A stretch of DNA of 64,000 nt from Ophelia neglecta (Eukaryota): the NCBI GenBank assembly GCA_965285935.1, contig OZ260663.1:14012001-14076000 (forward strand). The letters are read 5' to 3'. The notes beneath the pieces are model-generated. The model was not told the DNA's origin and ran no database searches. It saw nothing but the letters and a program-made list of their open reading frames with translations. Positions 18,568-62,784 of the stretch are shown piece by piece. Numbering within the stretch: position 1 is the first letter of the stretch; every line of letters begins with the position of its first letter. The translations under genes and the position numbers were made by a program.

Positions 18568-18749
18568 TATTATTAATGTATACATCTGCCATTTGAACGA
18601 CGCGAGTCTAAAAGAAGCACGTGGCTTAATGCTAGCTGCGTTTACCATCCGAGTAATGATAAATACGGTTTGTCGTGGAATTTAACTGTCAGAATTTTTC
18701 ATATGCTCGATTAAATCGAAGAAATCACATTGCAATAAACATACAGGAA

Positions 18750-23635: not shown

Positions 23636-23710
23636 TTTATTTTCTTTTCTTTTCAGGTAAGTACATCGTGATGTTACGACTCTATAAAAATACATCTTCT
23701 GGGGGTGAGT
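23636..23710 (+). promoter_or_regulatory. Recursive splice site 1 (AG|GT at 23656/23657) with 48-nt cryptic RS-exon 23657-23704
   Basis: tttattttcttttcttttcag|gtaagt is a full acceptor abutting a perfect donor, on the sense strand. A downstream donor ggg|gtgagt lies at 23705. Confidence 0.8.
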
Positions 23711-23899
23711 TGAAGCAGTGCTCATAGCAGAAGCATTTTTGCCAGGTAAAACTTATTTCAGAAATACTGTATGCGAGATTGGTGCTCATGTCGTTTCAAA
23801 AGAAAGTGTGAACTGTACATGTGAAAAACAATGACAAAAGAGTGAGACTGGTCTCAGTGGCCATTCACAAGCCGAGTAGATCTATCTCAGACATGGCTT

Positions 23900-24720
23900 G
23901 TCTTAAAATGGCAATACCTGTCATTGTGTGTTCGAAAAATGTCCCAACAGAGCCCAGGATTGTCAATGACAATTACGGGCTTGTCAACATGATAACAAGG
24001 TGACTGTGCTGTCGACCCCTTGGGGCTTGCCCGATGTGCGAAGTGTTCAGGTACCAGTGTGGACATATGGAACAAATACGCAGTTTTAACTCGGCGTATG
24101 ATATTTTTATTGGCTTCGTTCGCTTGTAGTCATTTGTAATTAGGAACGTGGTTGCTGTGGGTTGAATTGGCTAGACAGGGCACCATGAAGCCTATATCCT
24201 ATGCCAATTCGAGGTGTTTGCATTGTCCCTTCAATTTTAGAAATATTTTGTTTTCATCATTCATGATATTTTGTTTTATGCCAATTGGCAATACTAGGAT
24301 ATTTAATGTCGACTGCCTTATATTTATCGGTTATCTATTGCATAATTGACTAGAAGATGTCCTGTCCCGCCGATGGGTTGCTGGTATATATACCTAAGTT
24401 CGTTCAACACACTAGCAGTGATCATACTGTAGTTTGAACAGCTGTGTGCTTCTAGGGGCGCAGCACGGGCAGCACTGAGTGTTAGAGCTTTCTACGTACT
24501 AGCTTGAACTGGATCAACTGTGATCGACCGAAATGTTGCCATCAGCATTGATACATGGTGCGCAAACTACGCATATCACAATTGTTTTCTTCACTTCTAA
24601 TTTTTTCAATTCATCCCTTTCCGACGTTTCCAGTAGGTACACTTTCAATATTCTCAATGCAGCCGCCTTAGGCATGGATACGCTGTCTCCCAAACGGCTG
24701 ATAATAATGAACAGTGATCT
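23900..24720 (-). pseudogene. Decayed viral-type UDP-glycosyltransferase domain
   Basis: SLFIIISRLGDSVSMPKAAALRILKVYLLETSERDELKKLE (GD at 24679-24693; cf. hypovirus LIATMGTRGDHVP..ANMAA..VKTHLL..EDLENLK), with a later DIGFMVPCLANST. Confidence 0.45.
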
Positions 24721-25319
24721 ATAAAACGTTTAATAATGTTATTATAGATTACAGGACATACATACTATTATGTAGTATGACGAAATCGTAACACATCCCG
24801 ACAAGATAATTAGATAGCAACCTGAAAAAAAATCTCCTGCTTTTACACTTTTGTTGCCACCCATTAAATTGTCTATTGAATAAATAATCTCTTATTTCCC
24901 GTTAATACAAAAGTAAGAACAGAATAAACTGATATTATGAGTTATGGTGGCAGATATCTACTCCACCCAGTTCTAACCACATCCTACCATTATATCATAT
25001 GTGCAGTATGGAAACTCATTATTTAGCTTAGTTGACAATGTTTGCACGTTCACGACATTTTTCCTAAATAAAAATGACCCTTTAATCTCGGAGGCCATAA
25101 TTGAACAAGAAAGCAATTCTACGAGACATGAAAACTGCCATCATTATTCTTATGTGGATTTATGGTAGTGATCAACTTTACAAATTCAGGTAATTTTGAA
25201 TGCCATGTGCAACCTGAAATGCTTAGCAGTAATTCGTCTGGCATGTGCCTGCCTACGCATTTCAGCGACAACAAAATAATATATTACGTAGAGGTGGATC
25301 AGCCTAGATTATTGATATT

Positions 25320-25760
25320 ACTTGTACTGAGAGTGGATTAAGCTGTCTATCTTACATAGTTCAGAATGGTACTTCTCAAATGTATTTTTTTGTACATAAA
25401 CTAGGTACAAGCACAATAATCAATTGCGGTTTGTTGCAAATATGCAATTTGACCCTTTTGTAGTTCATGTGCCCTTCATATTCGAGGTCCGTGGAAAGAG
25501 TCATTTGTGAAACCATTCGGTTTGTAATTATCAGAAGGAATAATATTTACCATTTAGTTCCTTGTAACCATGTAGTGTTCACCTTATTCCTCGATTCCAA
25601 TTCTTGCGTACATCATGTAATGAATTGATTACTAGAACTGGAAGACACGTCTATCCACAGTGAACGAAACAATTGTCCATGGCCATGCTGCGCTTTGTGG
25701 TCAATTGGTTTCCTATGATTATATATTCGCAGTTCAAATGACTTACTTTACTGATTTCAA
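25320..25760 (+). pseudogene. Decayed RdRp C-terminal fragment (motifs B-E and downstream)
   Basis: ESGLSCLSY, FVANMQFD, WKESFVKPFGL*LSE..I*FL, IPRFQFL...ELITRTGRHVYPQ, NETIVHGHAALC (cf. hypovirus PRF.V.QNP.AILLRRTAFRYYQ..ER.AGHA). Confidence 0.45.
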
Positions 25761-40991: not shown

Positions 40992-43900
40992 AACCTAATG
41001 ATGAAGTAGTATTTTATTATCATATATTTAATGTACTAAATTTAATTGTGACGGATATACATGACCCATCGGGAACTAAGAAGAACAAAAGCAGTTTCAC
41101 AACACAATGTGTTATACGTCATAAACAAAATCAATTTATAGCGTCATCAGAACTTCCTTAGCGCTCATATACAACAAGAAGTAAATGCATCAATTGAATG
41201 TACCTTGCCTACCATTACTTTTCAAATAGACCGCTATCGTGGATAATTTTGCCACTGATAAAGCATCTGCCTGGACCGTCTTTTTAATGCAAATGCTTAA
41301 GCATCATAAACAGCATGTGTCTTGTACATCACCAACTCAATCTTTGAAAGTTGCGTTTGTACAGGCAGCATTTCATACACAAAAAATCCGATTATTCTGT
41401 ACTTGATATGGCACATCTGTGCTTAATTGTTTGCTGATCATCAGTGATATAATGTGGCTAATGGATTTGTAAGAGGCTTAGACAAGACAGAACCGAAACG
41501 TTAATGGAATACATATTCAAATCACCGTGAACTCTTGCGAAATCGCCGCGCCATTAGCGCTATTATTGTGTTTGTTGCTAGGCCGACAATTCGATATTGC
41601 GTCATTCCTTTAACCGCAGAATACTGCTGACATAATACTTCGCAAAAAAAAGGCGAACAACGCTCATCAAGGATTCTTGGGCTTATTTCATGTATTTCTT
41701 AACTTCTGCAAAAACTGTTTATTATTCAAAACCAATGGACAATTTCATTACTATCGCATGATCGAAACAAGTTTTTCAACAACTAGGAAACTATATTTAA
41801 CTACGAGGTACAAAGATTATAATCGGCTTACATTCGTCAAGCAAGCTACATGTAAAAGTTAGGCTCTAATTTATGCATTTACCTAAATGATAGCACATCG
41901 CATTGTCTTTGCCTAATCTTATCAAAGTTGCACGCCACAAATCCCAATTAATAGAGCATAGTGATTTGATCGCGGCGCTGAAACCAGATTTGCTAATACA
42001 TGTTATTCAGCAATTATGCAAGCAATTGACCCGGTCAAATAAGTAGGTTAATTTCGATGCATATCGGGTATAATATTTTATTTCTGCCGCACAATGACAC
42101 TTGCTTATTACAAATGCATCGTATGCGACATTTCTTGGTGATTAGTTTATAGTGACTTATCTGTGTTAGTTAGTTGTAGCAAGGGTGTCGATTAACCGTG
42201 CTATCCACACGGTAGTTAAGCAATATTGTTATCACGAACAAATACATTACTTAGAAACCAGTGATACTTTTGCAGGATAGAGCTACGTACGCTCACAATA
42301 TTTTGTGACAATTATGAATAAGTAAAGTTTTATATGGCTGATCACAAATTACATAGCTATGGATTGAGAATAAAAGTCTGCACGCTTGGAACTTCCTTCT
42401 TGGAAAGGAACTAATCGTTTAATCAACCAAGTCATGCATTAACATGGAGGCAATCTCAAGAAACACGAAATCGGCCATCAATATTCCAAGGATAAGGAGG
42501 GAGGCTAGCAATGTTACCAGTCATGTAGCCTCAAGACATAAAAACTTCCACGTCAGGCTCTCATGAATAGAAATATCTTTTGGCCCCTCCATAGTGTCTT
42601 TATGTCATTATATAGGATACATCTGAAAGATACAAACTGGCCCCATTGCCATTACTTGTCATGATGGGCTAATTACGTTGATACCAGCAGTGATATATTC
42701 ACTTAATTATCAAAATTGCATCATTATCTATAGCGACAACGGTGCAAACATGTGATGAAAAAAGCTTTAATACGTCTATATGTTGATTGATTGATCGATT
42801 AATTAATGTATTGATTGAATCAGTGATTAATATGATTAGATAATGATGCCATTCAGAAAATACAAAACAATGGAAAAGTAAAAAAACAGTTATTGAAGCA
42901 TCACACATATCACAATGATATAAATACATATTCAATATACTTAAACATGCTACATAAAAGTCTGATTGTGCAAATAATTATATCGATTACTCTCTAGTTA
43001 TTGAAATGTGAGTAGATAATGAAAGTCAATGAATACCGTTACAGTGGCATCACAAATTAGCAATCATTGTAGTAAGTTATAATTGTGAGTTAAGCATACA
43101 ATTATTATTGTGGGCTTTAAACAAGTCAAAAGTGCTGAGTCGTGAGTGGCGAGTACATTGCTAAAAAAAAGATTATGGTAAGGTAAAAAGACGACTGTGG
43201 TAAGGTAAAACCCTCCATTTCGGCATTATCGACTATCTAGTATGGGCACAGTGTGATATATTGCTTGAGTAATATTATAAATGAATAGTTGATGATTTAA
43301 CAAAGGTGTTAGCAGTGTTGTGCAGTACCTTTATACATATGCCAAAAAAAAACCAGTAAGTCGCGCATCATTAACCGCCATCAGAAATAATCAATTCAAT
43401 GGGTAAACAATTGTCTGGAACTGTCCCGAGATATATATCTATATACATGTTAACATAGTTCGTTTCATATGAATTAACAGAGTTGTGGGAACATTTTTTT
43501 TTTATAATATACACTCGTCTTTTGTTACTTTCCTGGCTTTGTTCGAGCATGTAATACGTGACTGGTCTACTCCAGTGTCTTCCGGCTTCCACGCTATTAG
43601 GTTGACAAGTCAGACATGTATTATGGTGGCCCCTAGTAGGATTAAGGCGCTCATTAAATTTGGCCCTGCAGTCTTAAGCATGCGATGACGTCTGAGGGCA
43701 TGGCATATTTCAACACCTTTGGGCCCAATTAACGAGCTTGCACTTGTCAGCGGAAAACGTGATGCTCTAGGATATTGAAGACGGGTACTCAAAGGACTTA
43801 TTAATATGCTTGTTTATAAGATATTCGTTGCCTTTTTAACTTGGTTAAGTAGACTTAGTTGCCCTTTATAAGAAACTATTACTATTCATGAGAAAAGTAG

Positions 43901-44399
43901 TGGAAAACTTTGCAATACTGTTTTATCCATTTATTAAAGGTTCGTCTTTGAACAGAAGCTTTTAAGATAAATAGTTCAAGTCGTGGAGTAACGCCTTGTG
44001 CATTTGTCACAGGCACATTGGGCAATGCTTTCTTTTTGTAATGTTTCTGAAAGAGTTCAGTTAATAACGGTTGAATGAACTAGAAGCATTTTTATTCTGC
44101 ACATCGAACACAAGGGTAGCCGAAGACCTTAAGCATATATCAGTAGTTGGATTGCCACAAAGACGAGCAATGTGGTTTTGGAACCCACAATGATTGTGAT
44201 TTATTTGCAATCTAGGGATGCAGAAAAATGAGAAACCTGATATCTAAAGCAGAAGGCAAGTTGAGATATTATTAACAAGTAATTTCACTTAAAATCACCC
44301 ATAATTGACCCATATTCTTTCCCAAAAAGCATTTATAAAAAGTTGTGTTAATAACTTAAAGTGAATCTCGAGGACAGCATAACAGTATACATTAAACTA

Positions 44400-45150
44400 T
44401 TTATATCTAATAAAATAATCGTGAATAGAAATGATTTACATAGTTCCTTGCAATAAAGATAACTTTCATAATGTGAGCGGTACATCCGAAACACCGTTTT
44501 CCATTTATTGCCATTGAGATCCATGGACCCTGTGGAGTGTCCGTGATCATTTCTTCAGTTTTGAAGCGTTGTTCCTGTTCACTTTTGCCCAGAGTAAACT
44601 GCTTTGTGTATACTGAAGTTCGCTTTGACAACAAGACTTTTTGATAACATTTTCCAAGTCATTATTGTATATAGAAGCAAAGCCCTACTAGTGAAACAAA
44701 GAGTAGCCGGCACGGGAACTTCTGCAATATGAGAAAACGAACTTGTATAACTCTGGGTTGTCTTGGGTAAGGGGCAGTGGGGGGGGGGTTGCATTTCCTG
44801 TAAAGTGCTTCTCTGTCTTTGTGTTACCCCACAATCATTGTACATAGAATAAACGTCTAGTAATTCCTCTATGCATCTTGACCATTCATTTCTGATCAAT
44901 CCTGTGTGTACACACAGACGTTGTTCAATATCTCTTGCAATGTTTGACTTCGGAATATTCTCAGCCTTTTCCGATTAGTCTCTTCGCCTTTTGTGATGGA
45001 TGTCTGCTGGCATTTATGACTGAATACGTACAATAATATGGGACCAAGGAATCGTAAAGAGGCCCTTGGCTGGATGCAAAGATGACGTGGTGACGCAAGT
45101 ATACTGTAATAAGACTCTTGGCTACACAGTTGTCATAAAAGTCTCTTCGG
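44400..45150 (+). pseudogene. Decayed fusari/hypovirus-like RdRp remnant (copy A, inside the duplication)
   Basis: Same element as 50000-50720: PKHRF, VRFDNKT, VAGTGTSAI*EN. Confidence 0.55.
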
Positions 45151-45294
45151 ATTCATAAAAAGTTTAAAACATTTCTCACAGTCGGTGGCATGATAAAAAC
45201 CAAAGATGTTATGTGAAACCTGAAGATCCATTTTCTTCGTTTCACTTCAAATAACAACAGGTTCATCATTCTTCTTACTATTGCTGGACACTTC

Positions 45295-45394
45295 NNNNNN
45301 NNNNNNNNNNNNNNNNNNNNNNNNNNNNNNNNNNNNNNNNNNNNNNNNNNNNNNNNNNNNNNNNNNNNNNNNNNNNNNNNNNNNNNNNNNNNNN
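45295..45394. other. Scaffold gap (100 N)
   Basis: Run of exactly 100 N. Confidence 1.
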
Positions 45395-48300
45395 AAGCAT
45401 ACCTAGACCATTGCCAAGCACAGCATGTCTGCTCGTAGCTGAATTAACTCGCCGCCTAGAATCAGTGGCGGATGAGGCCGGAGTGACAGTGATATCTTTG
45501 ATCTTCACTCCAGGGAATGTAGGCCTTGAAAGTGGCGTGGTACAAAAGTCACGGAATAGCGTGTCTTGGCTAACTAAAGCCGGAAAAAGTCGGATTTGCA
45601 TAGGTGAATGACAACTAGTTAATTGATTGTAGTTGTCTGTTTGAGCTAGCTTTCCACCCCGTTGATCATGAAGTCCTCGGATTGACGATCAGCCAGCATA
45701 GCGTTGATTTTTGGCGCGGCTCTATGTGCTTAAACCGCTTTTTAGGTTAATACTTTAGTTGGCTTTTTTAAAATTTTGTTCTAGTTTTAGTAGCCAACTA
45801 AGCGTATACCCAGGTTCTAGTTTGTTTGCAAACTGCCTTCCTAAATAGAGCTGTTAATTTTCAAGAAATTTAATATCCGTTCATACACTGGTGCGTATCT
45901 ACATTCCTATCCTTTCTATAAAGTGCGAATGGAAATGAGCAAGACGGGATGAAAACAGTGTCCCCTTGACGTCAGAAGATGGCAAATCGATATTTACTGC
46001 GAGTTAAGAAAAGGGAAGAGGATCATTTTTATTTTTCCATTAAGAGTTTCATATTTCCATTAAGTGTTCTTAAACACTTACGTTCAGCGTAAATTTGGGG
46101 AGATATTAGCATTTCCCTATGGCGTCTTCTGTCTGTTGTACGTACGGCACAAAACAACAATAATCGCAAAAAGCGAAGCCGTCTGCCATCCTGGTACAGT
46201 ATTAGGCTGCATAGGCAATATTAGAGAGTTTTGGCTTTCCTTTATTCAATGTCAACCCCAACCCCAAAGATAATGTTCATATTTGTTGTGGATTCTGACT
46301 TGGGTTCTGAAAAATACCTAATGATGAATGATGAATCTACGGCAGGTACTCCAGTGAGGCAGCACTCTAAAGACGGCATTGAACCCACTGTCACAAGGAG
46401 ACACAGTGGCGATATGACTATATAAGTGTTTAAAGCAACGTAAAACCCCAACAACCAACCCAACCTAATGATGAAGTAGTATTTTATTATCATATTATTT
46501 TATTATCATATATTTAATGTACTAAATTTAATTGTGACGGATATACATGACCCATCGGGAACTAAGAAGAACTATAGGGAACAAAGCAGTTTCACAACAC
46601 AATGTGTTATACATGATAAACAAAATCAATTCATAGCGTCATCAGAACTTCCTTAGCGCTCATATACAACCAGAAGTAAATGCATCAATTTAATGTACCT
46701 TGCCTATTATTACTTTTCAAATAGACCGCCATCGTGGTTCTTATGTCTAAAGGATAATTTTGCAATTGATAAAGCATCTTTTTAATGCAAATGCTTAAGC
46801 ATTATAGACAGCATGTGTCTTGTACATCACCAACTATTCTTTGAAAGTTGCGGTTGTACATGCAGCATATCATATACAAAAATCCGATTTTTCCATACTT
46901 GATATGGTACATCTGTGCTTAATTGTGTCCTGATAATCAGTGATATAATGTGGCTAATGGATTTTTTAGAGGCTTAGACAAGACAGAACCGAAACGTTAA
47001 TGGAATAAATATTCAAATCACCGTGAACTCTTGCGAAATCGCCGCGACATTAGCGCTATTATTGTGTTGGTTGCTAGGCCGACAGTTCGATATTGCGTCA
47101 TTTCTTTAACCGCAAGATACTGCTGGCATAATACTTCGCAACAAAAAAAGGAGAACAACGTTCATCATGGATTCTTGGGCTTATTTCATGTATGTCTTAA
47201 CTAGCCTACTGATTTCTGCAAAACTGTTTATTATTCAAAACCAATGGACAATTTCATTACTATCGCATGATCGACAACAGTTTTTTTTAACAACTGGGAA
47301 ACTATATTTAACTACGAGGTACAAAGATTATATTCGGCTTACATTCGTCAAGCAAGCTACATGTAAAATTTAGGCTCTAATTTATGAAATCACATGGCTG
47401 CTTTACCTAAATGATAGCACATCTCATTGTCTATGCCTAATCTTATCAAAGTTGCACGCCACAAATCCCAATTAATAGAACATAGTGATTTGATCGCGGT
47501 GCTGAAACCAGATTTGCTAATACATGTAATTCAGCAATTATGCAAGCAATTGACCCGGTTAATTTGGATGCATATCGGGTATAATATTTTATTTCTGCCG
47601 CACAATGACACTTGCTTATTACAAATGCATCGTATGCGACATTTTTTGGTGATTTGTTTATAGTGATTTATCAGTGTTAGTTAGTTGTAGTAAGGGAGTC
47701 GATTAACCGTGCTATCCACACGGTAGGTAAACAATATCGTTATCACAAACAAATACATTAACTTAGAAACCAGTGATAGTTTTGCAGGATGGAGCTACGT
47801 ACGCTTCACAATATTTTGTGACAATTATGAATAAGCAAACTTGTATATGGCAGATCACAAATTACATAGCTATGGATTGAGAATGAAAGTCTGCACGCTT
47901 GGAACTTCCTTCTTGGAAAAGAACTAATCGTTTAATCAGCCAAGTCATGCATTAACATGGAGGCAATCTCAAGAAACACGAAATCGGCCATCAATATTCC
48001 TAGGATAAGGAGGGAGGCTAGCAATGTTACCAGTCATGTAGCCTCAAGACATAAAAACCGCCACGTCAGGCTCTCATGAATAGAAATATCTTTTGGCCCC
48101 TCCATAGTGTCTTTATGTCATTATATAGGATACATCTGAAAGATACAAACTGGCCCCATTGCCATTACTTGTCATGATGAGCTAATAACGTTGATACCAG
48201 CAGTGATATATTCACTCAATTATCAAAATTGCATCATTATCTATAGCGACAACGGTGCATGAATGTGATCAAAAAAGCTATAATACGTCTATATGTTGAT

Positions 48301-49999
48301 TGATTGATCGATTAATTGATGTTTTGATTGAATCAGTGATTAATATGATTATATAATGATGTTATTCACAAAATACAATACAATGAAAAAGTAAAAAAAA
48401 AAAAGTTATTGAAGCATTACGCATATCACAATGAACAGTCAATGAAGGGCATACTGATACATGTATATATTAAATTTACTAAAAAGGCTAATTGTGCTCT
48501 AGTTATTGAAATGTGAGTAGATAATGAAGGTTAATGAATAGCGTTACAGTGCCATTACAAAGTTGCAATCATTCACACATAAGGCTCTTAGTTAGTTATA
48601 ATGGTGAGTTAAGCATACAATTATTATTGTGGGCTTTAAACAAGTCAAGAATGCTGAGTCCTGAGTGGCGACTAAAAGACGATTATGACAAGGTAAACAA
48701 AAAAAAGATCGTGGTAAAATAAATTCACCCATGTCGGTATTATCGACTATCTAGTATGGGCACAGCGTGATATATCAACTCCGTTCGGTTCATTGAGTAA
48801 TATTATAAGTGAAAGAAATAGTTGATGATTAAACAAAGATGATAGCAGTGTTGTGGAATTCGAAATATTCGAAATATCTTGATAAAACATCCAGCTTACA
48901 CAAACGGTGTCCAATAATATGATTTATGTTGTTATATGTAAAACAAAACAGTAAGTTGCACATTATTAACCGCGATCAATAATAATCAATTTAATGGATC
49001 AAAAAATTATTTGGGTCCACTGTATATCTTTATATACATATATATATATATATATTAACATAGTTCGTCTCATATGAATTAACAGGGTTGTGGGAACATT
49101 TTTCTTACTTTCCTGCCTTTGTTCGAGCATGTAACAGGTGACTGGTCTACTCCAGTGTCTTCCTGCTTCCACGTTATTAGGTTGACAAGTCAGACATGTA
49201 TTATGGTGGCCGCTAGTAGGATTAAGGCGCTCATTAAATTTGGCCCTGCAGCCTTAAGCGTGTAAACATGCGATGACGTCTGAGGGCATGGCAGATTTCA
49301 ACCCCTTGGGCCTAATAAATGAGCTTGCACTTGTCAGCGGAAAACGTGATGCTGTAGGATATTGAAGACGGGTAATCAGAGGACTTATTAATATGACTGT
49401 TTATAAGATATTCGTTGACTTTTTTAGCTTAAGTTGGTTATGTTGACTTAGTTGCCCATAATAAGAAACTATTACTAATCGTGAGAAAAGTAGTAGAAAA
49501 CTTTGCAATACTGTTTTATCTATTTATTAAAGGTTCGTTTTTGAACAAAAGGTTTCAGATAAATAGTTTAAGTCGTGGAGCAACTCCATGGCCATTTGTT
49601 ACAGGCACATTGGGCAATACTTTCTTTTTGTAATGTTTCTGAAAGGGTTCAGTTAATAACGGTTGAATGAACTAGAAGCATTTTTATTCTGCACATCGAA
49701 CACAAGGGTAGCAGAAGACCTTAAGCATATATCAGTAGTTGGATTGCCACAAAGACGAGCAGTGTGGTTTTGGAACCCACAATGATTGTGATTTATTTGC
49801 AATCTAGGGATGCAGAAAAATGAGAAACCTGATATATAAAACAGAAGGCAAGTTGAGATATTAATGACAAGTAATTTCACTTAAAATCACCCATAACAGA
49901 CCCATATTCTTTCCCAAAAAGCATTTATAAAAAGTTGTGTTAATAACTTAAAGTGAATCTCGAGGACAGCATAACAATATACATCAAACTATTTATATC

Positions 50000-50720
50000 T
50001 AATAAAATAATCGTGAATAGAAATGATTTACATAGTTTGTTGCAATAAAGATAACTTTCATAATGGGAGCGGTACATCCGAACCACCGTTTTCCATTTAT
50101 TGCCATTGAGATCGATGGACCCTGTGGAGTGTCCGTGATCATTTCTTCAGTTTTGAAGCGTTGTTCCTGTTCACCTTTGCCCAGAGGAAACTGCTTTGTG
50201 TATACTGAAGTTCGCTTTGACAACAGGACATTTAAGTCATTATTGTATATAGAAACAAAACCCTTCTAATGAAACAAATGGAGCTGGCACGGGAACTTCA
50301 GCAATATGAGAAAACGTACTTCTTTAACTCTGGGTTGTCTGGGACGGGGGGCAGTGGGGGGGGGGGGGGGTTCCTGTGAAGTGCTTCTCTGTTTTTTACA
50401 TCACCATCATTGTACTTGGAATAAACGTCGAGTAATTCCTCTATGCATCTTGACCATACATTGCTGATCAAGCCTGTATGTACACACAGACGTTGTTCAA
50501 TGTCTCTTGCAATGTTTGACTTCAGAATATTCTCAGCTTTCTCCGATTAGCCTCTTCGCCCTTTGTGATGGATAGCTGCTGGCATTTATGACTGAATACG
50601 TGCAATGATATGGGACCAAAGAATCATAAAGAGGCCCTTGGCTGGATGCAAAGTTGACGTGGTGACGCAAGCATACTGTAATGAGCCTCTTGGCTACACA
50701 GTTGTCATAAAAGTCTCTTC
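50000..50720 (+). pseudogene. Decayed fusari/hypovirus-like RdRp remnant (copy B)
   Basis: FVAIKITFIMGAVHPNHRF (PNHRF at 50078-50092; cf. fusarivirus YIM..YGPNHRF), VRFDNRT (A, ~50213-50227), NGAGTGTSAI*EN (B, 50277-50315), LLCFLHHH (C; cf. LSCFGDDH), NILSFL (E). Confidence 0.6.
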
Positions 50721-52324
50721 GGATTCATAAAAAGTTAAAAAACAAGTCGGTGGCTTGATAAAAACCAAACATGTTATGTGAAACCTGAAGATCCATTTTC
50801 TTCGTTTCACTTCAAATAACAACAGGTTCATCATTCTTCTTACTTGCTTGGCTGTTTGAGCATATGTATCGATGTTCGGCAGATAAAGAATATTATGAAT
50901 AATCAGTCATTCAACCATTGCCTTTGGATTAACTACATCTGGCCAATATCTGCTTGAAACATGTTTGGGTTTCACCTTGAAAAGAAGTTGGGCGCATTTC
51001 CAACATCTCCTCGCTTAAAAACACAGTCAATATATCCATGAAAATAAACAACTCCTTGTTAGATTTACAAGCCATATTTCGAACTCTTGTCTAAGCCTGC
51101 AAATTCGCGCTATTGATGAGAATGTAGGCATGGAGGATAATGGCCTATCTAATCATTGCCTTTATGAATAATAATGTTAAATGATTGATGGAGCAAATAT
51201 GTCTTTATTGTGAAATTTTGCCATATGGTAATCACACGGTCTCGTGTATTGTTTATCACACTTGGGCCCAATTTTGGGGCACATTCCATTAGGTGTCTTA
51301 TAACCATGACAACGTCAATTCATTATCAAAGGAGGAGTGGCTAACCGGTAGGCTGAAATGCTTATTAATTCAATACGAAGCCATTACCTTCCAAGAAGCG
51401 CGAGCTACGTCATCACAATCCGCGAGCTGCATCATCAAGAACCATGAGCTGCATCACGAACAGCCGTGAGGTTCGTCATGTGAAAGCCGTGTACCCTTGC
51501 TGCAAACAGTTATTAAAATTTATGTTTAAGTAGCCCTTGTTGAGTCTCATTAAAAGCGTCTCTGGTTCACTTTATGCAGCGCACATTGCATTACACTTTC
51601 ATGAAGATATAATTTCACTTTTCTCCTTCATATGCAGGGCTCTTTTACATCCTTTTTTGGTCTTATTTCTTGGTGTTATTGGGACATATTCAATTATGAG
51701 AAAGCTTATGCCATCGTAGATTCTCCTAAATATCCGGTATGCAGTCCCACAAGAATAAATCTCCAGTTTCCCAACGGCAAATTAGCTTGTAATGCAATTC
51801 ATGAAACCACATATATAAATTGATATCTGGAATAGAAAGTCAACAGTGATTCATGATGCGAGTCAAACTAGTCAGCGGTCCACATAGAAATATCCACTTT
51901 GTAATTTCATACTCGATACTTCTTGATTCGATATTTGATTTGTCTGTCCTGTATCCACTTTCGTATAGCCAATACCTATTCTGTTAATGTTTAATATGAT
52001 CTGAATTGGATAGTTAGCGGATTTCCCGGTCTCCAGCTCTGAAAACAACGTTTTTTTATTTTGTGCTCACGCATATTTGCCATTTTATAAATCGTAGAAA
52101 CTTCTCAAACATGTAATCAATCAGCACTTGGGCTGCGGGAATGATGGTATGCTATCTTAAGCCTTTGGTTTGTTCTTCACTACTAAGAAAAAGCCCTATG
52201 ATGGAGTTACTAATGCATTCGACGAAAGGAATGAATAAGATGCAATAACATGTCAAGTAGAACCAGGATGACGTTCTGTGATTTTGTTACTAACCCCTTA
52301 GAAGAGAAAAAAGGCATTAGTGAA

Positions 52325-52419
52325 ACAGAGAGAGACAGAGAGACGGAGAAACGGAGACAGACAGACCGACAGACAGACCGACAGACAGAGACACAGAGAC
52401 ACAGGGACACAGACAGAGA
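52325..52419. repeat. (GACA/GAGA)n microsatellite
   Basis: Directly visible. Confidence 0.9.
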
Positions 52420-54717: not shown

Positions 54718-54979
54718 GGAAATGAAGTATCGGTTCATTGTCTCATTTGGCTCTTGAAATATTTGCAGGCGCTATTTCCTAGCACTGCTTGACTGTATAG
54801 TCTTATATAAAAAAAAAAGCGCGAACTCATTATATAATTCCTAGATCCGGAAATGAGGTATCGGTTCATTGTCTCACTTGGCTCTTGCAATATTTGCAGG
54901 CGCTATTTCCTAGCACTGCTTGACTGTATGGTCTTATATAAAATAAAAAGCGCGAACTCTTTATATAATTCCTAGATCC
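54718..54979. repeat. Tandem duplication, 2 x 131 bp
   Basis: ggaaatga(a/g)gtatcgg...cctagatcc at 54718-54848 and 54849-54979, with few mismatches. Confidence 0.95.
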
Positions 54980-56149
54980 AGACATGCATCCCCCATACGA
55001 ATCTACTCATCGAATATACGTGTAATTCGGCAGAAAGGAAGTAGCAATCTTTGTAACAGTTTTCGTTATAACGAGGCTGAAATTCCAATTCTATCCACTT
55101 CATATATTTTTTTTTAAATTGTTCTAATCGGCTTACCTATGCGAGTTTCCGGCTTGAGCACTTAAATTGTTGAATCACCATACTTCGCTCGGTAAAATCA
55201 CCGGGAAACTCGGGACATGGCTGAATTAAACGAAAGTGGTCAAGGTTAATTCTGTTTTAGCGCGGGTTGTTAAAGATACGCTTATGTTGGATGAACTCAT
55301 GGTAAAGCATAGGCGTTTGTTTTAGCACGCTTGATAAAACATGGGCATTTCATTAACAACACGTATGCTTTTTCACAGCTCACCAGCAGCCGACAAATAG
55401 CGGGTCTAGTGAGCAACACGTCCTCCCATTTAAATGTATTACGACTTGTGTATCGCTAAGAATATTATATTATATCTTGACTTTAGTAGGACGTAAATAC
55501 AAATAGTATACATAGCATAGATTCGATTTGTACGTTAACAATATATTAGCTCAAAGAATGTTTGGTTTTCCACAGTTTCAACAGGAAATTATTTGTGCAT
55601 TTCAGTTTTCGTCATGCAAACCCATTGCAGGTGACGTATCTATGCAAAGTCAAAATGGCGGCGGAAAGTTGTAGTTATAAATTCAAAATGTATACTTTAG
55701 GCGATAAAAGAAAAGGTCATCTGCACAATAGGTTCTGACTTGCAGGTTGAGTGAACGTTCGCGTATTCTTGAATGCAGCTTCGCCAGTATTAAATGACCT
55801 TGCTTTTAAAATGAAGCTCCGCTCTAACAAAAAAATCCAATTAGGCCATATCGGGTTAACTTTTCAGTATTCAAATATATGTATGTTTTTATTAATACAC
55901 GGCATGGTGATGTTCTGAATCGATGATAAAAGCGCTGATAGGAGGGGGGGGGGGGGGGGGGCTTCCACCTAGCAAAACATTTTTAGCATAAAGCATAGTG
56001 GATAAAGGCATCACGTCATAATTATACCCAGACTATTAATTTCTAAAAATATTTTGTCAATGAAATAAAAATAATTGCTGCAAACCTGCGTCGTATGTTC
56101 AGCACATACGCATTTAGATCTACAATTTTATGAATCTCTCCCATGTTCT

Positions 56150-57060: not shown

Positions 57061-57727
57061 TGCAGATTAGTTTCAATCGAAGAAACTCCCCAGCAATTTG
57101 AATAATGAGAGTCCCGAGATGAAATGAATGTAAAAAGCTCCCAGTCAAACTTATACTTAAGAATACATCTCTTGATTACTACATAGTGAATAGTACGCCA
57201 TTTCTACTAATAAACCACAGTATGATACATTTGTGAGACCATTCTTTATCGCCAAAATTATACCTATGCCTTTCTTTGTGTGTGACCTAGTGCAGTTTTA
57301 GTCGTTGACAGAATGTGATGGCATTGGTAGGTGATGATGGTATGCTTCCGTTCAGCAGTGACGTGTGATCGAAATAGTTGCGATATGTAATGACAGGTTG
57401 ATCCATTGTGCTAGCAGCTTGCAGCATAGCTTTCTGATTACTCATTACTATCATACCAGCATTGAATGAGTTCTTAGACTTATATTCTAAGCGTCTTATA
57501 GGCAATTAGCAATCCTGGCACAAAGAAAACTCACACTGGAGCTTTGAGTAAACGCGATCAATGCGTTGGGATAATTTTATTAGTTTTAAATGGATTTCAT
57601 TTTTCGTTGGAAATTAAGGCCTTTCCAACCAGGCATTGATGTTAACAGTATCATCTCTTAAGCTCTGCCTTGCGATTATGGCACTATCTGGTTGTAGGGA
57701 ATCTATTAAAAACTGCCAGATCATAAC

Positions 57728-57854
57728 TATGTCGTCGGTTCTAAAACTTTATATTAAGGCAAAATTTTATCACAAAAGATTATCTAGCGGTATGTCGTCG
57801 GTTCTAATACTTTATATTAAGGCAACATTTTTCCCGTGATAGATTATTTAGTGG
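57728..57854. repeat. Tandem duplication, 2 x ~63 bp
   Basis: tatgtcgtcggttctaa.actttatattaaggcaa at 57728 and 57791. Confidence 0.9.
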
Positions 57855-57964
57855 AATGCACAAATTAAAAACAGACTAGCATTATTTCTTGTAATAGGAC
57901 TCATAATGTAAGTGTCAACCAATAGCAATTGACATACATTTTCTTCAGACAATAATATGTATTG

Positions 57965-58765
57965 AATAATACATTGATTCCTGGGAAATACATCGAATAA
58001 TACCCTGATTCCTAGGAAATACACTGATTAATACATTACTTCATGTTGCGTTTACATGGGTAAACGCGAAAAAATACATTGATTTTTTTTCTGCTGACAA
58101 ATGCACAGAATCCTGGGTAATAATGGAATATTACATTGCCTCCTAGGTAGTAAATATGCCTAATAAACGGTCTAATATAACGTAATGCACGGACTCATAA
58201 GTGGTTACTTGCTAATACACCGACTAATGCATTGATTCAAGTGTTTTAACACAGACTTATACGCTGATTCCTGGATATTACACGGATTCATACACTGATT
58301 CCCTGGTTAAACACTGACTTAAACACTGATCCCTGGGTATTACACGGACCAATTATCTGAGACCTTGGTAATACACGGACTTCTACCCTGATTCCTGGGA
58401 AATACACGGATTTATACACAGAAATCTTGGTAATATACGGACTTCAACACTGGTTCCTGAGTAAAACGAAGACTGATACGCTGATCTCTGGATGATACAG
58501 GGAATCGTACACTGATAACTGGATAAAACCCAGCCTATTGCACTGATTTCGGGCAATACATGGACTTATACCCTAATGCCTAGGTAATGCACGGACTAAT
58601 ACACTGTTTCTAGGGCAATACGGAATAAATAAACAGATACCTGGGAACACAGACTTCTGCACTCATTCCTGGGTACAACAGGTAATTATACAGTGATTAA
58701 TGCATAAACACGGACTAATTCACTGATTGCTATGAAAAACACGGACTAATACGCTAATTGCAGGG
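57965..58765. repeat. Degenerate ~31-bp minisatellite
   Basis: Head-to-tail units close to atacactgattcctgggtaatacacggactt. Confidence 0.85.
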
Positions 58766-59549
58766 TTCCCACTGGAGTAACACATCAAGCTTAAACCAAA
58801 CAAACTAAAAACCGCGAGCAGATATGTTTAGCTATGGTAATAAGGGCTATGTGGGAAATGACTCTCAGGAAGTATTTGCAAACAGAACATTTTCTGCGTG
58901 TGGAAATATGTTGCTTTACAGTTCTTAAAAAACGGGAGTGGATACCCGGCAGGCAAAGCCAAATCAGTAGTATAAAATTAATCTTGAAGTTATTTGTATT
59001 GGTACTGACACTTCCTCCACTCTGATTTTGGTTTGCCTTGATTTTGTTAGGCGTTCAGCTGAAGGCTGCGTATGAAGTCAGACTTTTTTTATTGGTCCCT
59101 TCTCAACTAATGATGTAGAAAATAGCTAATGGCGTTTTTGCGTATTCTTTAATAGGCAATATCCCCAGTTTGGAACAATGCCATCTCCCATTATAGTGAT
59201 ATTATTATATACTGTCGAAAATATCCGTCGAAAAGATTGTAGCTGGGTCGATCCCAGATGAAAGTGGTGTAAGCCATTTTATCCACATATCTTTTTATGG
59301 TAAATATTTGACTGTGCTTAGATTTAGTGTCAGATATGTATGCACTGTTGCAAAATTCTGAGATGTTCTTCGCAAAAGATGGGCTATTCTTATCCGCATA
59401 CAATTATTTAATACAGCGGTAGTTTTAGAATGCATGCAATGTGACATATGTATACCTAAGTGAGTCAACTTTCAGAATATCGCCAATGCCAAGACCAACA
59501 AGACATGAATAGAAGTATCAGTCTGTGAAAGCCAAGTCCATAGCAATAA

Positions 59550-60720
59550 TTAGTAGATGCTTCAGGGGGAAAGAAACACAATGAGCATAGATTGGTTCTT
59601 TGAGCGTAGATTGTTGATTATATGAACAAGACCGGTATATTCGCCCCCTTCGGGTGTAGGCAGACTGTAATATTGTGTTCCATGAGCAATAATTAGGATC
59701 ACTTCTCTGATAGCATGTCGTTTTCGTTAAAGAAATGTAATCGGACAAGAACACTAAACAGGACTAGAAATGACCTTGGCAATACGAGCGCTGAGACCTA
59801 GTGCCAATCACGTAGCCCTGGCGGGAACCTTGCGTAAGCACCACCCGCGATGAAAGTGCACGGAAGTATTGTCTCTGTTGTGATATAGAGTATATTCTGT
59901 GTCATACGGATGATTGCCAATGCAAAGATTGTGATCTTAGATACAGCTGTCTGTCCAGTTATTCCCGTTAAGAGATCAGCCTATATTAATGAACAGAAAG
60001 AATTAGATGAATGCCTTGAAGTGTTCATATTAACACCAGACACTTCATGATGAAATGGGACAGATTAATGGAAAATTTCTGCCATTAATTTTGATTTATC
60101 TTCCTGTAATTCAGTCCCGTTTTATTATACATTATGGTATAGAACAATTAAAAACTCTCTGGCACATTGACCATTAAATAAGTACCCATGCGCTTAATAC
60201 ATTTGCTTTGAAATGTCTTAGTCGTATCTGGCTAATATGATATGCTAAAGGCTTTAAAATTGCGTGACTTATAAAAAATATCGGTGAAGTTTCTATTCGT
60301 ACAGAAGCCTTTTATGCAACTTTCGTAGCATTAGATTGACGTGTGTGCGCATTTTTGCCGTGTTGGTAATAGGGTTGGACGTAGTTTTCTTGAAAATTCT
60401 CGATTTATAAACATTATTGGTCAGGTTTTGTTTCGGGTTGAAGCTTCTTAGACAAATGCTGAAGCTTTGATTGGCGTGTTTGAAATTTGTTTTCGGTAAG
60501 ATCGGTGAACCTCTCCTATACCCACCCATCCACTGAAATATTATGTCTGTAAAACCTACGGCAATCGGCATCGTATTGTGCTTTTAGTCTTTCTTTGCAT
60601 ATTGAGAGAAATCCAACATTTTCTTTGAGAACAAGACTATTTCATTACCTACTTGATGCCCACAAAGTGGTCGAGCGAAACAAATATATCATTCCTTGGA
60701 TTCTTGTTATCTTTAACCTT
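59550..60720 (-). pseudogene. Decayed hypo/fusarivirus-like RdRp (motifs F, A, B, C, D, E in order)
   Basis: KDNKNPR (60694-60708), TMPIAVGF..FQWM (60554-60568; cf. TPIKVGMPLNGYWM), FSICLRSFN..RIFKK (A, 60437-60454), TGITGQTAVS (B, 59939-59968), LYHNRDNT (C, 59865-59888; cf. LYNTSDDT), LVFLS (E, 59743-59757). Confidence 0.7.
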
Positions 60721-61429
60721 TGTTTCATTTCTGCAATAACAAATTAAGTACAGTTATGATTTGTTATTTTGAGGAATAGAAAAGTTTTCCTCTTTTCCGC
60801 TTTAGCTGCCACAGTTTGTTTTCGACATTATCTTTCGTCAGTGATCATTAAGATAATAGCGACGATCTTACATCTGCGGCAAGGATTTAAAACAGCAAAA
60901 CGTGGAATAAAAATCAATCGCCCTCTTTAGGCTTTTTCTATATCAACACCTTCGGTTTGGACTATAAATCGGTTTTATATTTTATGTAGCATCTCACTAT
61001 CCGACGAATAATACGATTGCTTGGTAAAAAAGGCTATGTGTCTTCAAAGAAAGTGCTGCGTTTAATTAAGTGTGCGATGAATACTACTAGTAAATGTTTA
61101 CCTAAGACGTTTATGTGTTTGTTCTGGTTGGATTCAAAACTAGCTTCAAAATGTTATTAAGGATTAATGGAAGTAGTTCACACTGTGCTGTTTTAAGAAA
61201 TGTCTAAATATGAATACATCAACGAACATATATCTGGGAAAACTATAATACATCAACGAACATACACCTGCGACCCCAAATGATAAACCATCCTTCTTTT
61301 GTTCACGAACTGTTTTATCTGAAACTAGAGATTGATTTGTTGATGTGTGTAGGGCTTTGCAGCTGGTTCATGCTAACTAAATGGATTATTAACGGGCCGA
61401 TTTAATGGACTGTTCTTGCCCAATGGTTT

Positions 61430-61960
61430 GGCTTTGATTGCTGGGTATCCACTCCCAATTTTTAAACTGCCAATCAATAAAGTCTATTAAACAAACTGCA
61501 GAAGCATTGATCACGTCTTTTCTCCCCGAGGGGCCTATTATCCCAAGAACAAGGTACATGAACTAACTACTTATCTTAATATATAACGTTATAGCTATTT
61601 AAACTGATAAACAGAGTGCAGCGGAATTAGATCAATGCTGCGGTCAACTGATCAAATATGCATAGCGTAATATGATTCGTTTATTGATGGCAGAGGACCT
61701 AGTACCTTAATAGTCCCCAAAGACTGTTTAATGACTCACATTGCTCCTGACGGGGTCGTTATGCTACCATTTTGAAGTTAATTGGACACTTTAGGAGGCA
61801 AATCGGCAAGATGGAGACCTTGAATTCTTACTGATTGTCGATCACTCACTATTTATCTCGGCCACTCAGAGTTTGTTATGCTGATTGAGATGTAAACTAT
61901 CGTTAGTATAAAAGGGTGGAAGTCACAATCACGGCTACTTGAGCTGGATCAGCACTTAGG
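61430..61960 (+). pseudogene. Decayed RdRp N-terminal half
   Basis: All in a single frame: AGYP (61440), GAYYPKNKVH (61530), GIRSM..TD, ILTDCRSL (A, 61824-61847), IKGW (61908; cf. RKKGF). Confidence 0.5.
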
Positions 61961-62711
61961 AAACTTGGGTCTCCCCGCTGATACCTGTTAATGTACTAAC
62001 AATGGCTTAGAGAATGTACCACCTAGTCAATATTGGATAAAATCTAACGCGATTTACGTTGTGACTTCTATTACACAATTGCTGGCTTGTGAATCGAACA
62101 CGAGGATTGTGAAGGGGATAGTCCAAGGCACTTAAATTATGAAATGCCTACTTATTTAAAACTTTGCTTTTTAGTAAATAATAGAAGGCACACTCCTTAA
62201 AATGTCTTGTATGCTTCTTGCACACATAATGAATAAAAGGGATTTATTTTATTGGTATCATTTATGCTATTCCAAACTTATTAAATTAAAGCCAAATTCA
62301 CAATTTGTATTACCGGAAACGCCAATTGACAGGTATTGGCTACTTAAAATAAGTATTTTAATTTGCACATTCAGTTGTAGTTGACCACCAATATTGCCGA
62401 TAGTCTCTTCCTATTTCGTTTAGTTAAAATCAACTAGATTTCGTTGCTGTAATATAAGTTGGTTTTGAAATTTATCATGGTATTTTGAGATCTACAGAAA
62501 CATCGGTGTCTCCACTATTGTTTTGCATAGCTCGGAACACACAGATGACATGCCATTCGGACACCAGAATCACATTTATGTATTTATATTAGATCTCATT
62601 ATTTGGTCGGAGTTTATACACACTTGATAGGAAATGCACTAATGTTGTTTGGTACAATTGTTGCAATACAACTCACAATTAGTCTTTTACTACTGATTTA
62701 ACAATTACAGC

Positions 62712-62784
62712 ATGTTTTTTTCTTTTTCAGGTAAGTTGTTCTGAACAATTATGATAGTGTGACCTATGTCTTCATATGGTAAGT
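62712..62784 (+). promoter_or_regulatory. Recursive splice site 2 (AG|GT at 62730/62731) with 48-nt cryptic RS-exon 62731-62778
   Basis: gtttttttctttttcag|gtaagt, with branch-like ctgat/ttaac at about 62693-62702. A downstream donor atg|gtaagt lies at 62779. Confidence 0.8.

What the first reader, a model, noticed from the sequence alone, without database searches (positions are those of the whole stretch)
23636..62784. Recursive splicing of a >58-kb intron: two ratchet points, each with an exactly 48-nt cryptic exon
Seen in the sequence: two perfect Y-rich CAG|GTAAGT junctions on the sense strand split the intron into ~18-kb and ~39-kb pieces (~34 kb if the duplication is collapsed). Both have a second strong donor (GTGAGT at 23705, GTAAGT at 62779) exactly 48 nt downstream, yet the two 48-mers are unrelated in sequence. 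Established: Drosophila ratchet points and vertebrate RS sites are defined through short downstream cryptic exons. Inference: the same mechanism operates here, in an apparent lophotrochozoan where I know of little description, possibly with a tight exon-definition length.
Basis: partly seen in the sequence, partly recalled or inferred. Interest (0 to 1): 0.85.

Follow-up and report, generated by a model that had tools for sequence, protein, structure and literature searches.

The report
Predicted recursive splice sites in long intron
The first, more than 50-kb intron of a mollusc- or annelid-like receptor guanylate cyclase gene holds two textbook "ratchet points" of the kind fruit flies use to remove long introns in steps; the sequence pattern is far beyond chance, but the mechanism is already known and no RNA data were available to show it is used here.

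Summary
CAG|GTAAGT sits at 23657 and 62731 on the + strand. These are the only AGGTRAGT matches on either strand of the 64 kb. Each follows a 16-17/20 pyrimidine tract with TT at -6/-5, and each has its next GTRAGT exactly 48 nt downstream.

Shuffles and 214 kb of real control DNA put the full pattern at roughly 0.003 expected sites or fewer; two are seen.

Both sites lie on the sense strand of a receptor guanylate cyclase (ANF-receptor) gene. Its exon 1 ends at 5602, and its conserved exon 2 is not in the window.

Segment sizes (18.1 kb and 33.6-39.1 kb), cryptic-exon length (Drosophila about 50 nt) and donor strengths fit Drosophila-type recursive splicing.

Limits:
- No RNA evidence could be obtained.
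- No close relative was available. About 104 kb of homologous first introns from other lophotrochozoans hold no such site.
- The "tight 48-nt ruler" rests on two cases.
- The N gap is intronic and sits between two 90-91% identical 5.4-kb copies, probably an unmerged contig overlap. It affects only the length of segment 2 and the linkage of site 2.

Verdict: a probable new member of a known kind, of moderate interest.

The parts
4807..5602 (+). Coding part of exon 1 of a receptor guanylate cyclase / natriuretic-peptide-receptor-like gene: ATG, signal-peptide-like start and the N-terminal half of the ANF_receptor ligand-binding domain. It ends in phase 1.
   Evidence: Pfam PF01094, E 4.7e-07. 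There are 882 homologs, 478 of them at E<=1e-10. Full-length relatives carry ANF_receptor + Pkinase + Guanylate_cyc. Homolog alignments stop at 5598-5601, and the boundary is conserved in L001, L002, L005, L006 and L007.
5603..5608 (+). Native 5' splice site of exon 1 (GAG|GTAAGC).
   Evidence: It matches CAG|GTAAGT at 7/9 positions; U1 duplex -9.6 kcal/mol.
5603..23656 (+). Intron segment 1 (18,054 nt), predicted to be removed as the first lariat.
   Evidence: Coordinates. No homolog-matching exon lies inside it. The Drosophila segment mean is 17,953 nt (10.1101/006163).
23634..23656 (+). Ratchet point 1 acceptor: 17/20 pyrimidine tract, TT at -6/-5 and CAG. The candidate branch point is TTTAT, with the branch A at 23639 (-18).
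23657..23704 (+). Cryptic RS-exon 1 (48 nt). Its first six bases, GTAAGT (23657-23662), are the donor regenerated after joining to exon 1.
   Evidence: It is open in the phase-1 frame (KYIVMLRLYKNTSSG). Regenerated donor: 8/9 match, U1 duplex -12.1.
23705..23710 (+). RS-exon 1 donor, GTGAGT (GGG|GTGAGT). Predicted to serve exon definition and then to lose the competition with the regenerated donor.
   Evidence: 6/9 match, U1 duplex -10.4, weaker than the regenerated donor.
23657..62730 (+). Intron segment 2: 39,074 nt as assembled, about 33.6 kb if the duplicate is collapsed.
39927..45279 (.). Copy 1 of a 5.4-kb direct duplicate. It ends 15 nt before the N gap.
   Evidence: 90-91% identity to copy 2, with 77 gap openings.
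45295..45394 (.). Assembly gap (100 N) inside the intron, lying exactly between the two copies.
   Evidence: No coding frame crosses it. Its letters were neither filled nor looked up.
45395..50844 (.). Copy 2 of the duplicate. It starts at the first base after the gap.
62698..62730 (+). Ratchet point 2 acceptor: 16/20 pyrimidine tract, TT at -6/-5 and CAG. Candidate branch points are TTAAC (branch A at 62701, -30) and CTGAT (branch A at 62696, -35).
62731..62778 (+). Cryptic RS-exon 2 (48 nt). Its first six bases, GTAAGT (62731-62736), are the regenerated donor.
   Evidence: It has in-frame stops in phase 1 (KLF*TIMIV*...). Regenerated donor: 8/9 match, U1 duplex -10.7.
62779..62784 (+). RS-exon 2 donor, GTAAGT (ATG|GTAAGT).
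   Evidence: 7/9 match, U1 duplex -10.7, a tie with the regenerated donor by this crude measure.
62731..64000 (+). Start of intron segment 3, which runs off the window. Exon 2 was not found in the window.
   Evidence: Searches with the conserved exon-2 peptide (..VVLCASPDSVR..NGEYVFFNIDLF) found nothing credible in the window.

Best explanation
These are two intronic recursive splice sites (ratchet points) of the Drosophila type, in the long first intron of a receptor guanylate cyclase gene.

Predicted course (inferred, not shown):
1. As RNA polymerase passes 23.7 kb, the 48-nt unit 23657-23704 is recognised as an exon. U2AF/U2 bind the strong pyrimidine tract and CAG, and U1 binds the GTGAGT 48 nt downstream (exon definition).
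2. Exon 1 (donor at 5603) is spliced to 23657, releasing an 18-kb lariat.
3. The junction GAG|GTAAGT is a new and stronger donor than GGG|GTGAGT. The 48-nt cryptic exon is therefore removed together with the next segment, when the same events occur at 62731.
4. The process continues onward to exon 2 or to further ratchet points beyond the window.

No trace is left in the mRNA. If cryptic exon 2 were retained, its in-frame TGA would truncate the reading frame.
For: Shown by sequence:
- The only two AGGTRAGT matches in 64 kb on both strands are CAG|GTAAGT on the gene's sense strand. Each follows a 16-17/20 pyrimidine tract, and each has its next GTRAGT at +48.
- Shuffles expect 0.003 such sites, and none of 2000 shuffles reached 2.
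- Real-DNA controls (214 kb, both strands) hold none.
- Only these 2 of the 26 strong acceptor-like sites on the + strand have a nearby donor.
- TT at -6/-5 is present at both sites. This is found in 99.5% of Drosophila ratchet points against 44% of ordinary introns (10.1101/006163).
- Plausible yUnAy branch points lie at -18 and -30.
- Segments of 18.1 kb and 33.6-39.1 kb fall within the Drosophila range of 2.6-63.6 kb, whose mean is 17.95 kb.
- The cryptic-exon length of 48 nt matches the Drosophila value of about 50 nt (PMC8605326).
- The regenerated donor is stronger than the cryptic-exon donor at site 1 and stronger by consensus match at site 2. This fits the donor-competition rule of PMC8605326.
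- The sites lie in unique sequence and are unrelated to each other.
- The host intron is truly long: exon 2, which is highly conserved in homologs, is absent from the window. Homologous genes also have first introns longer than 10 kb, and up to 39.5 kb.
Against: - There is no RNA evidence of any kind.
- About 104 kb of sense-strand first-intron sequence from homologous genes holds no comparable site. This covers a relative with 53% identity in the exon-1 protein (27 kb), the whole 39.5-kb intron of Haliotis cracherodii, 10 kb of Patella caerulea, and unnamed loci of 10, 10 and 7 kb. The sites are therefore not an old conserved feature of this gene family. The weight of this is limited, because the relatives are distant and in Drosophila only 6% of large introns are recursive.
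- Both cryptic exons are 48 nt and so preserve the frame, and cryptic exon 1 is open in the phase-1 frame. Drosophila cryptic RS-exons tend to be out of frame (PMC8605326).
- At site 2 the two donors tie in U1 duplex energy.
- Site 2 lies across an assembly gap from exon 1 and site 1.
Confidence: 0.72

Rival explanations
1. The two 48-nt units are expressed alternative microexons, or poison exons, that happen to be recursive. The model is the two 51-nt Ubx mI/mII exons. The recursive donor would regulate inclusion against skipping, rather than merely subdividing the intron.
For: - Both units are 48 nt, a multiple of three.
- Unit 1 is open in the phase-1 frame and would insert 16 residues into the ligand-binding domain.
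- Ubx mI and mII are frame-preserving 51-nt recursive exons (PMC8605326).
- At site 2 the two donors tie in U1 duplex energy, so some inclusion is conceivable.
Against: - Unit 2 has TGA at its fifth codon in the phase-1 frame, so including it cannot encode a receptor.
- An open run of 16 codons arises by chance nearly half the time.
- The inserted peptide resembles nothing in the homologs. Their sequence passes straight from the end of exon 1 to the conserved VVLCASPDSVR exon.
- No protein in the databases carries such an insert.
Confidence: 0.13
2. The sites belong to another transcript, for example 3' ends of alternative non-coding first exons or exons of an intronic non-coding RNA on the same strand. 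They would act as ordinary donors or acceptors and not recursively.
For: Long first introns often hold alternative promoters (general knowledge). Nothing in the DNA alone excludes another transcription unit.
Against: - An ordinary donor has no need for a 16-17/20 pyrimidine tract plus CAG directly upstream.
- An ordinary 48-nt exon has no need to begin with GTAAGT. Seeing this twice out of twice is not expected.
- No ORF in the intron has a Pfam match. There are no Rfam or tRNA matches.
Confidence: 0.08
3. Chance: two pseudo-sites in an AT-rich intron that have no function.
For: The bare core motif AGGTRAGT is not enriched: 2 are seen against 3.4 expected on both strands. No conservation could be shown.
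Against: - The full pattern is expected 0.003 times per window, and none of 2000 shuffles reached 2.
- Real control DNA has none in 428 kb of strand length.
- Both sites are on the sense strand.
- Both carry the TT at -6/-5 hallmark.
Confidence: 0.04

Closest known systems
Drosophila intronic ratchet points with cryptic RS-exons (Burnette 2005; Duff 2015, preprint 10.1101/006163; Joseph, Kondo and Lai 2018; Joseph and Lai 2021, PMC8605326)
   Same: - Juxtaposed (Y)nCAG|GTAAGT with TT at -6/-5.
- Location in a long intron on the sense strand.
- Segments of about 18 kb.
- A short cryptic exon of about 50 nt closed by a second donor.
- A regenerated donor at least as strong as the cryptic-exon donor.
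- Cryptic-exon content that is not conserved between the two sites.
   Different: - The host is a lophotrochozoan-like animal, not an insect.
- Use is not shown by RNA.
- Conservation is not shown.
- Both cryptic exons are frame-preserving in length (48 nt), whereas the fly ones tend to be out of frame.
Vertebrate recursive splice sites with RS-exons (as described in PMC6224609 and PMC6110456)
   Same: An RS-exon is defined first, splicing regenerates a 5' splice site, and retaining the RS-exon would introduce a premature stop (as for unit 2 here).
   Different: Vertebrate sites generally have weaker consensus and occur in much longer introns, mostly of neuronal genes. The two sites here match the strict fly-type consensus perfectly.
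Ubx mI/mII recursive microexons (51 nt each; PMC8605326, 10.1101/006163)
   Same: Two short, equal-length, frame-preserving exons inside one long intron, each starting with a regenerated donor.
   Different: Ubx mI and mII are coding and alternatively included. Here unit 2 carries an in-frame stop, and no homolog has a matching insert.
Computationally predicted RP-site enrichment in large introns of insects and sea urchin (Shepard et al. 2009, PMC2773006)
   Same: A sense-strand excess of combined acceptor-donor motifs in introns longer than 50 kb, taken as a signature of recursive splicing outside Drosophila.
   Different: That study covered no lophotrochozoan and did not consider downstream cryptic-exon donors. 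The evidence here is a single intron, not a genome-wide ratio.

Membership tests
Drosophila-type intronic ratchet point (recursive splice site with cryptic RS-exon) | A strong 3' splice site and a strong 5' splice site placed directly together: (Y)n N CAG|GTAAGT | tested here: met
   Both sites read ...TTTTCAG|GTAAGT, with 17/20 and 16/20 pyrimidines upstream.
Drosophila-type intronic ratchet point (recursive splice site with cryptic RS-exon) | TT at positions -6/-5 of the acceptor (99.5% of fly ratchet points; 10.1101/006163) | tested here: met
   TT is present at both sites.
Drosophila-type intronic ratchet point (recursive splice site with cryptic RS-exon) | Lies on the sense strand of a long intron and splits it into segments of a few kb to a few tens of kb | tested here: met
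   The sites are on the sense strand of intron 1. The intron is at least 58.4 kb as assembled, or at least 52.9 kb if the duplicate is collapsed. Segments are 18.1 kb and 33.6-39.1 kb. The fly range is 2.6-63.6 kb.
Drosophila-type intronic ratchet point (recursive splice site with cryptic RS-exon) | A short cryptic exon of about 50 nt, closed by a downstream 5' splice site that allows exon definition | tested here: met
   GTGAGT and GTAAGT lie at +48 at sites 1 and 2. Only these 2 of the 26 strong acceptor-like sites on the + strand have such a donor. The length criterion is from PMC8605326.
Drosophila-type intronic ratchet point (recursive splice site with cryptic RS-exon) | The regenerated ratchet donor outcompetes the cryptic-exon donor, so the cryptic exon is always skipped | tested here: inconclusive
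   - Site 1: 8/9 match and -12.1 kcal/mol, against 6/9 and -10.4.
- Site 2: 8/9 against 7/9, but a tie at -10.7.
This is a crude U1-pairing proxy, not a measured outcome.
Drosophila-type intronic ratchet point (recursive splice site with cryptic RS-exon) | Cryptic exon content is non-coding: out of frame or carrying a stop | tested here: inconclusive
   Unit 2 has in-frame stops. Unit 1 is open, and both are 48 nt, a multiple of three.
Drosophila-type intronic ratchet point (recursive splice site with cryptic RS-exon) | The ratchet motif is conserved in related species | tested here: inconclusive
   No relative closer than 57-61% protein identity was available, and the contigs of those closest two are too short. 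About 104 kb of homologous first introns in more distant lophotrochozoans hold no such site.
Drosophila-type intronic ratchet point (recursive splice site with cryptic RS-exon) | RNA evidence of use: exon-to-ratchet junction reads, segment lariats, saw-tooth nascent RNA coverage | not testable with these tools
   No RNA-seq for this organism can be reached. No protein or transcript of this species was found in the collections.
Expressed recursive microexon (Ubx mI/mII type) | A frame-preserving exon that is open in the host frame and present in some mRNAs | tested here: inconclusive
   Unit 1 is open but unit 2 is not. No homolog or database protein has a matching insert. mRNA data are lacking.
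Receptor guanylate cyclase / natriuretic peptide receptor family (host gene) | An ANF_receptor ligand-binding domain followed by kinase-homology and guanylate cyclase domains | tested here: inconclusive
   Only exon 1 is in the window: the N-terminal half of ANF_receptor, PF01094. Full-length relatives have all the domains. A short clearance-receptor-type gene cannot be excluded, since some relatives are named ANP receptor 3.

The most novel reading that the evidence does not exclude
Fly-type recursive splicing through cryptic exons is used in Lophotrochozoa under a stricter length rule than in flies: an exon-definition unit fixed at 48 nt, a molecular ruler. In addition, the open, frame-preserving first unit would be a regulated Ubx-like microexon that inserts 16 residues into the ligand-binding domain of a guanylate cyclase receptor.
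Probability: 0.07. Interest if true: 0.7.

Novelty: new member of a known kind. Interest (0 to 1): 0.42.

Why it matters
If RNA data confirm use, this would be a clean example of fly-type ratchet points with cryptic RS-exons in a third major animal branch. It would support the view that recursive splicing by exon definition is ancestral to bilaterians rather than a peculiarity of insects and vertebrates.

It would also give a simple sequence rule: a Y-tract with TT at -6/-5, then CAG|GTAAGT, then a donor about 48 nt downstream. That rule could be used to scan mollusc and annelid genomes, whose introns are often long, for recursive introns.

For genome annotation, it warns that such 48-nt units are not coding exons.

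Tried and rejected
1. Conservation in relatives.
- The closest relatives, P0151 (61% identity) and P0001 (57%), sit on contigs too short to reach into the intron.
- I walked 27 kb down the contig of the relative with 53% identity.
- I fetched the whole 98-kb Haliotis cracherodii gene and 7-10 kb of four other homologous introns.
- None holds an RS-like site. Patella vulgata P0194 was not on record.

2. Transcript evidence. P0071 and P0083 turned out to be intronless RNA-seq assemblies from other species. Nothing from the window's own species was found.

3. Further exons of the gene in the window. tblastn with full-length homologs and with exon-2 peptides, at permissive thresholds, gave only noise. 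The faint likeness of unit 1's YIVML to the IVVLC that starts exon 2 was judged to be chance.

4. Repeat or transposon origin of the sites. Rejected: the flanks are unique, and only the (TA)n run upstream of site 1 matches elsewhere.

5. Other genes or RNAs in the intron. Ten ORFs had no Pfam match, and there were no Rfam or tRNA matches.

6. Taxon assignment. A tree of exon-1 peptides places the window with unnamed sequences, apart from the named gastropod clade, so only "lophotrochozoan-like" can be said.

7. Literature. The 2018 Joseph, Kondo and Lai paper (PMC6709686) is not held, so the cryptic-exon length distribution is taken from the 2021 paper.

Exon 1 was searched alone, by reference. 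The frame statements come from translating each 48-mer on its own in three frames.

Full report
THE GAP FIRST

The only N run is 45295-45394. It lies inside the intron, between the two candidate sites, so no reading frame of the gene crosses it. The minus-strand ORF listed through it is an artefact of the X residues.

The gap sits exactly between two direct copies of a 5.4-kb stretch. Copy 1 is 39927-45279 and ends 15 nt before the gap. Copy 2 is 45395-50844 and starts at the first base after it. They are 90-91% identical, with 77 gap openings.

Because both inner copy ends abut the gap, the simplest reading is two contig ends that overlap but were not merged, such as divergent haplotypes. That would make it a false tandem duplication. 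A real duplication cannot be excluded.

Three consequences follow:
- Continuity across the gap is not known.
- Segment 2 is 39,074 nt as assembled and 33.6 kb if the duplicate is collapsed.
- Site 2 is linked to exon 1 and site 1 only through this scaffold join. The 5.4-kb overlap itself does argue for adjacency and the same orientation.

THE OBSERVATION

It is correct to the base.
- Site 1 reads TTTTCTTTTCTTTTCAG|GTAAGT, with GT at 23657. The next GTRAGT is GTGAGT at 23705.
- Site 2 reads TTTTTTTCTTTTTCAG|GTAAGT, with GT at 62731. The next GTRAGT is GTAAGT at 62779.
- Both distances are 48 nt.
- These are the only two AGGTRAGT matches on either strand of the 64 kb.

An alignment of the two sites plus or minus 100-150 nt shows nothing in common beyond TTTCAGGTAAGT, the downstream donor, and a TCTTC in the same register, which is within chance. 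The flanks have no other copy in the window or in the fetched loci, apart from the (TA)n run upstream of site 1.

IS IT MORE THAN CHANCE?

The bare core motif is not enriched: 2 are seen against 3.4 expected on both strands. The full pattern is.
- In 2000 dinucleotide-preserving shuffles, a YAG|GTRAGT behind a tract of at least 14/20 pyrimidines is expected 0.088 times. With a GTRAGT 30-100 nt downstream as well, it is expected 0.003 times. Two are observed, and no shuffle reached two.
- Real sequence has more T-rich runs than shuffles do, so I also used empirical controls. Only 1.3% of 20-mers on the + strand are at least 16/20 pyrimidine.
- Of 26 sites on the + strand with such a tract plus YAG, only these two have a GTRAGT 30-100 nt downstream.
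- In 214 kb of other lophotrochozoan genomic DNA, both strands, there is one Y-tract CAG|GTAAGT (L007, minus strand, 9053). It has no donor within 200 nt. No site has the full pattern.

THE HOST GENE

The ORF at 4687-5670 holds an ATG at 4807, a signal-peptide-like start, and the N-terminal half of an ANF_receptor ligand-binding domain (PF01094).

HMMER against 1.8 billion representatives gives 882 relatives. Named ones are mollusc and annelid natriuretic-peptide-receptor-like proteins. Full-length relatives carry ANF_receptor, kinase-homology and guanylate cyclase domains.

Homolog alignments stop at 5598-5601, where the sequence reads GAG|GTAAGC. Five homologous loci have a donor at the same phase-1 position.

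In the homologs, the next exon encodes the highly conserved ..VVLCASPDSVR.IMIKAH.LNFDNGEYVFFNIDLF. Nothing like it is in the window, even at permissive thresholds. The intron therefore runs from 5603 past 64000.

Long first introns are a family trait. The Haliotis cracherodii homolog has one of 39.5 kb. The relative with 53% identity has one of more than 27 kb. Three others exceed 10 kb.

A tree of exon-1 peptides places the window with unnamed sequences (P0151, P0001, P0152), apart from the named gastropod clade. The organism is lophotrochozoan-like, but it cannot be placed more precisely. Nothing here looked human.

FIT TO KNOWN RECURSIVE SPLICING

The fit to fly ratchet points is close.
[quoted passage not shown] They have TT at -6/-5 in 99.5% of cases, against 44% of ordinary introns. 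The segments removed average 17,953 nt, with a range of 2.6-63.6 kb (10.1101/006163).
- Both sites here have TT at -6/-5. The segments are 18,054 nt and 33.6-39.1 kb.
- Fly ratchet points need a short cryptic RS-exon of about 50 nt, closed by a second donor, which is then skipped because the regenerated donor wins. Reported lengths are 51, 51, 53 and 56 nt (PMC8605326). Here the unit is 48 nt at both sites.
- After joining to exon 1, the regenerated donor is GAG|GTAAGT, an 8/9 match to the consensus. At site 1 its U1 duplex is -12.1 kcal/mol, against -10.4 for GGG|GTGAGT. At site 2 the match is 8/9 against 7/9, but the duplex energies tie at -10.7.
- yUnAy branch candidates lie at -18 (A at 23639) and at -30 or -35 (A at 62701 or 62696).
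- In the host frame (phase 1), unit 2 has TGA at its fifth codon. Unit 1 is open (KYIVMLRLYKNTSSG).

WHAT COULD NOT BE SHOWN

No RNA data for this organism can be reached, and no protein or transcript of the same species turned up. Use of the sites is therefore inferred.

The conservation test was limited.
- The nearest relatives have only 57-61% protein identity and sit on short contigs.
- I surveyed about 104 kb of sense-strand first intron in more distant homologous genes. This comprised 27.0 kb obtained by walking one contig, the whole 39.5-kb Haliotis intron, three stretches of 10 kb, and one of 7.2 kb.
- Even a relaxed motif (AG|GTRAG with at least 11-12/20 pyrimidines) found no site.
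- The sites are therefore not an ancient feature of this gene family. This is weak evidence against function, because intron sequence does not persist at such distances and only 6% of large fly introns are recursive.

THE "EXACTLY 48 NT" POINT

With two cases, and a known clustering of fly RS-exons near 50 nt, equal lengths would occur by coincidence a few percent of the time. I treat a length ruler as an untested idea, not a finding.

PRIOR KNOWLEDGE

Full-text searches for recursive splicing together with mollusc, annelid or octopus terms found no relevant paper. A 2009 study did report a sense-strand excess of ratchet-type sites in the large introns of four insects and a sea urchin, though it included no lophotrochozoan (PMC2773006). 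Joseph and Lai regard the mechanism as unified across metazoans (PMC8605326). A lophotrochozoan case is therefore expected rather than surprising.

VERDICT

- Recursive splicing is the best explanation (about 0.7), with steps that are inferred, not shown.
- The ruler idea is unsupported.
- This is a probable new member of a known kind, worth a genome-wide scan and an RNA check, and of moderate interest.

Exon 1 was searched alone by reference, and each 48-mer was translated on its own.

Noticed in passing
window 39927-45279 and 45395-50844, gap 45295-45394: A 5.4-kb direct duplicate at 90-91% identity, whose two inner ends abut the 100-N gap. It looks like two overlapping contig ends, perhaps divergent haplotypes, that were scaffolded in tandem rather than merged.
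   Followed up: partly
window 11211-11394 and 18387-18570: A 184-nt inverted repeat, 80% complementary, with arms 7 kb apart inside intron segment 1. It is probably two copies of a short interspersed element in opposite orientation. Such pairs have been proposed to fold long introns (PMC2773006).
   Followed up: no
window 39248-39411: A (CTGTCT)n microsatellite of about 27 units, 0.5 kb upstream of the left edge of the duplicated block. It generates the spurious ORFs at 39026-39481 (+) and 39138-39416 (-).
   Followed up: no
window 58248-58621 and 57964-58037: A degenerate 31-nt tandem repeat (also scored at period 62) of about 12 copies, and a smaller related-looking array 0.2 kb upstream. 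Both are in intron segment 2.
   Followed up: no
window 54718-54986: Two tandem copies, 94% identical, of a 131-nt unit.
   Followed up: no
window 23610-23632: A (TA)n run directly upstream of the pyrimidine tract of ratchet point 1. It is the only part of either site's flanks that matches elsewhere.
   Followed up: yes
window 23694-23698 and 62768-62772: Both 48-mers carry TCTTC in the same register, 7-11 nt before the downstream donor. This is within chance for one 5-mer, but could be checked as a shared exonic element if more sites are found.
   Followed up: no
L008 (Haliotis cracherodii, GCA_022045235.1) 2001-100301: The abalone homolog spans 98 kb. Exon 1 is followed by a 39.5-kb intron and then a 14.5-kb intron, neither with any ratchet-like site. 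So not every long first intron of this family is predicted to be recursive.
   Followed up: yes
L011 (Logan SRR30767268 contig) 3934-9437: Downstream of the exon-1 homolog, the contig carries six called ORFs of 147-221 residues, all on the + strand, plus a 61-residue one. None has a Pfam match. That is an unusual density for an intron. The gene in this locus also did not translate exactly to the queried protein.
   Followed up: no
L007 minus strand, 9053: The only other Y-tract CAG|GTAAGT seen in 214 kb of control DNA. It lies upstream of, and antisense to, the receptor exon, and has no donor within 200 nt.
   Followed up: partly
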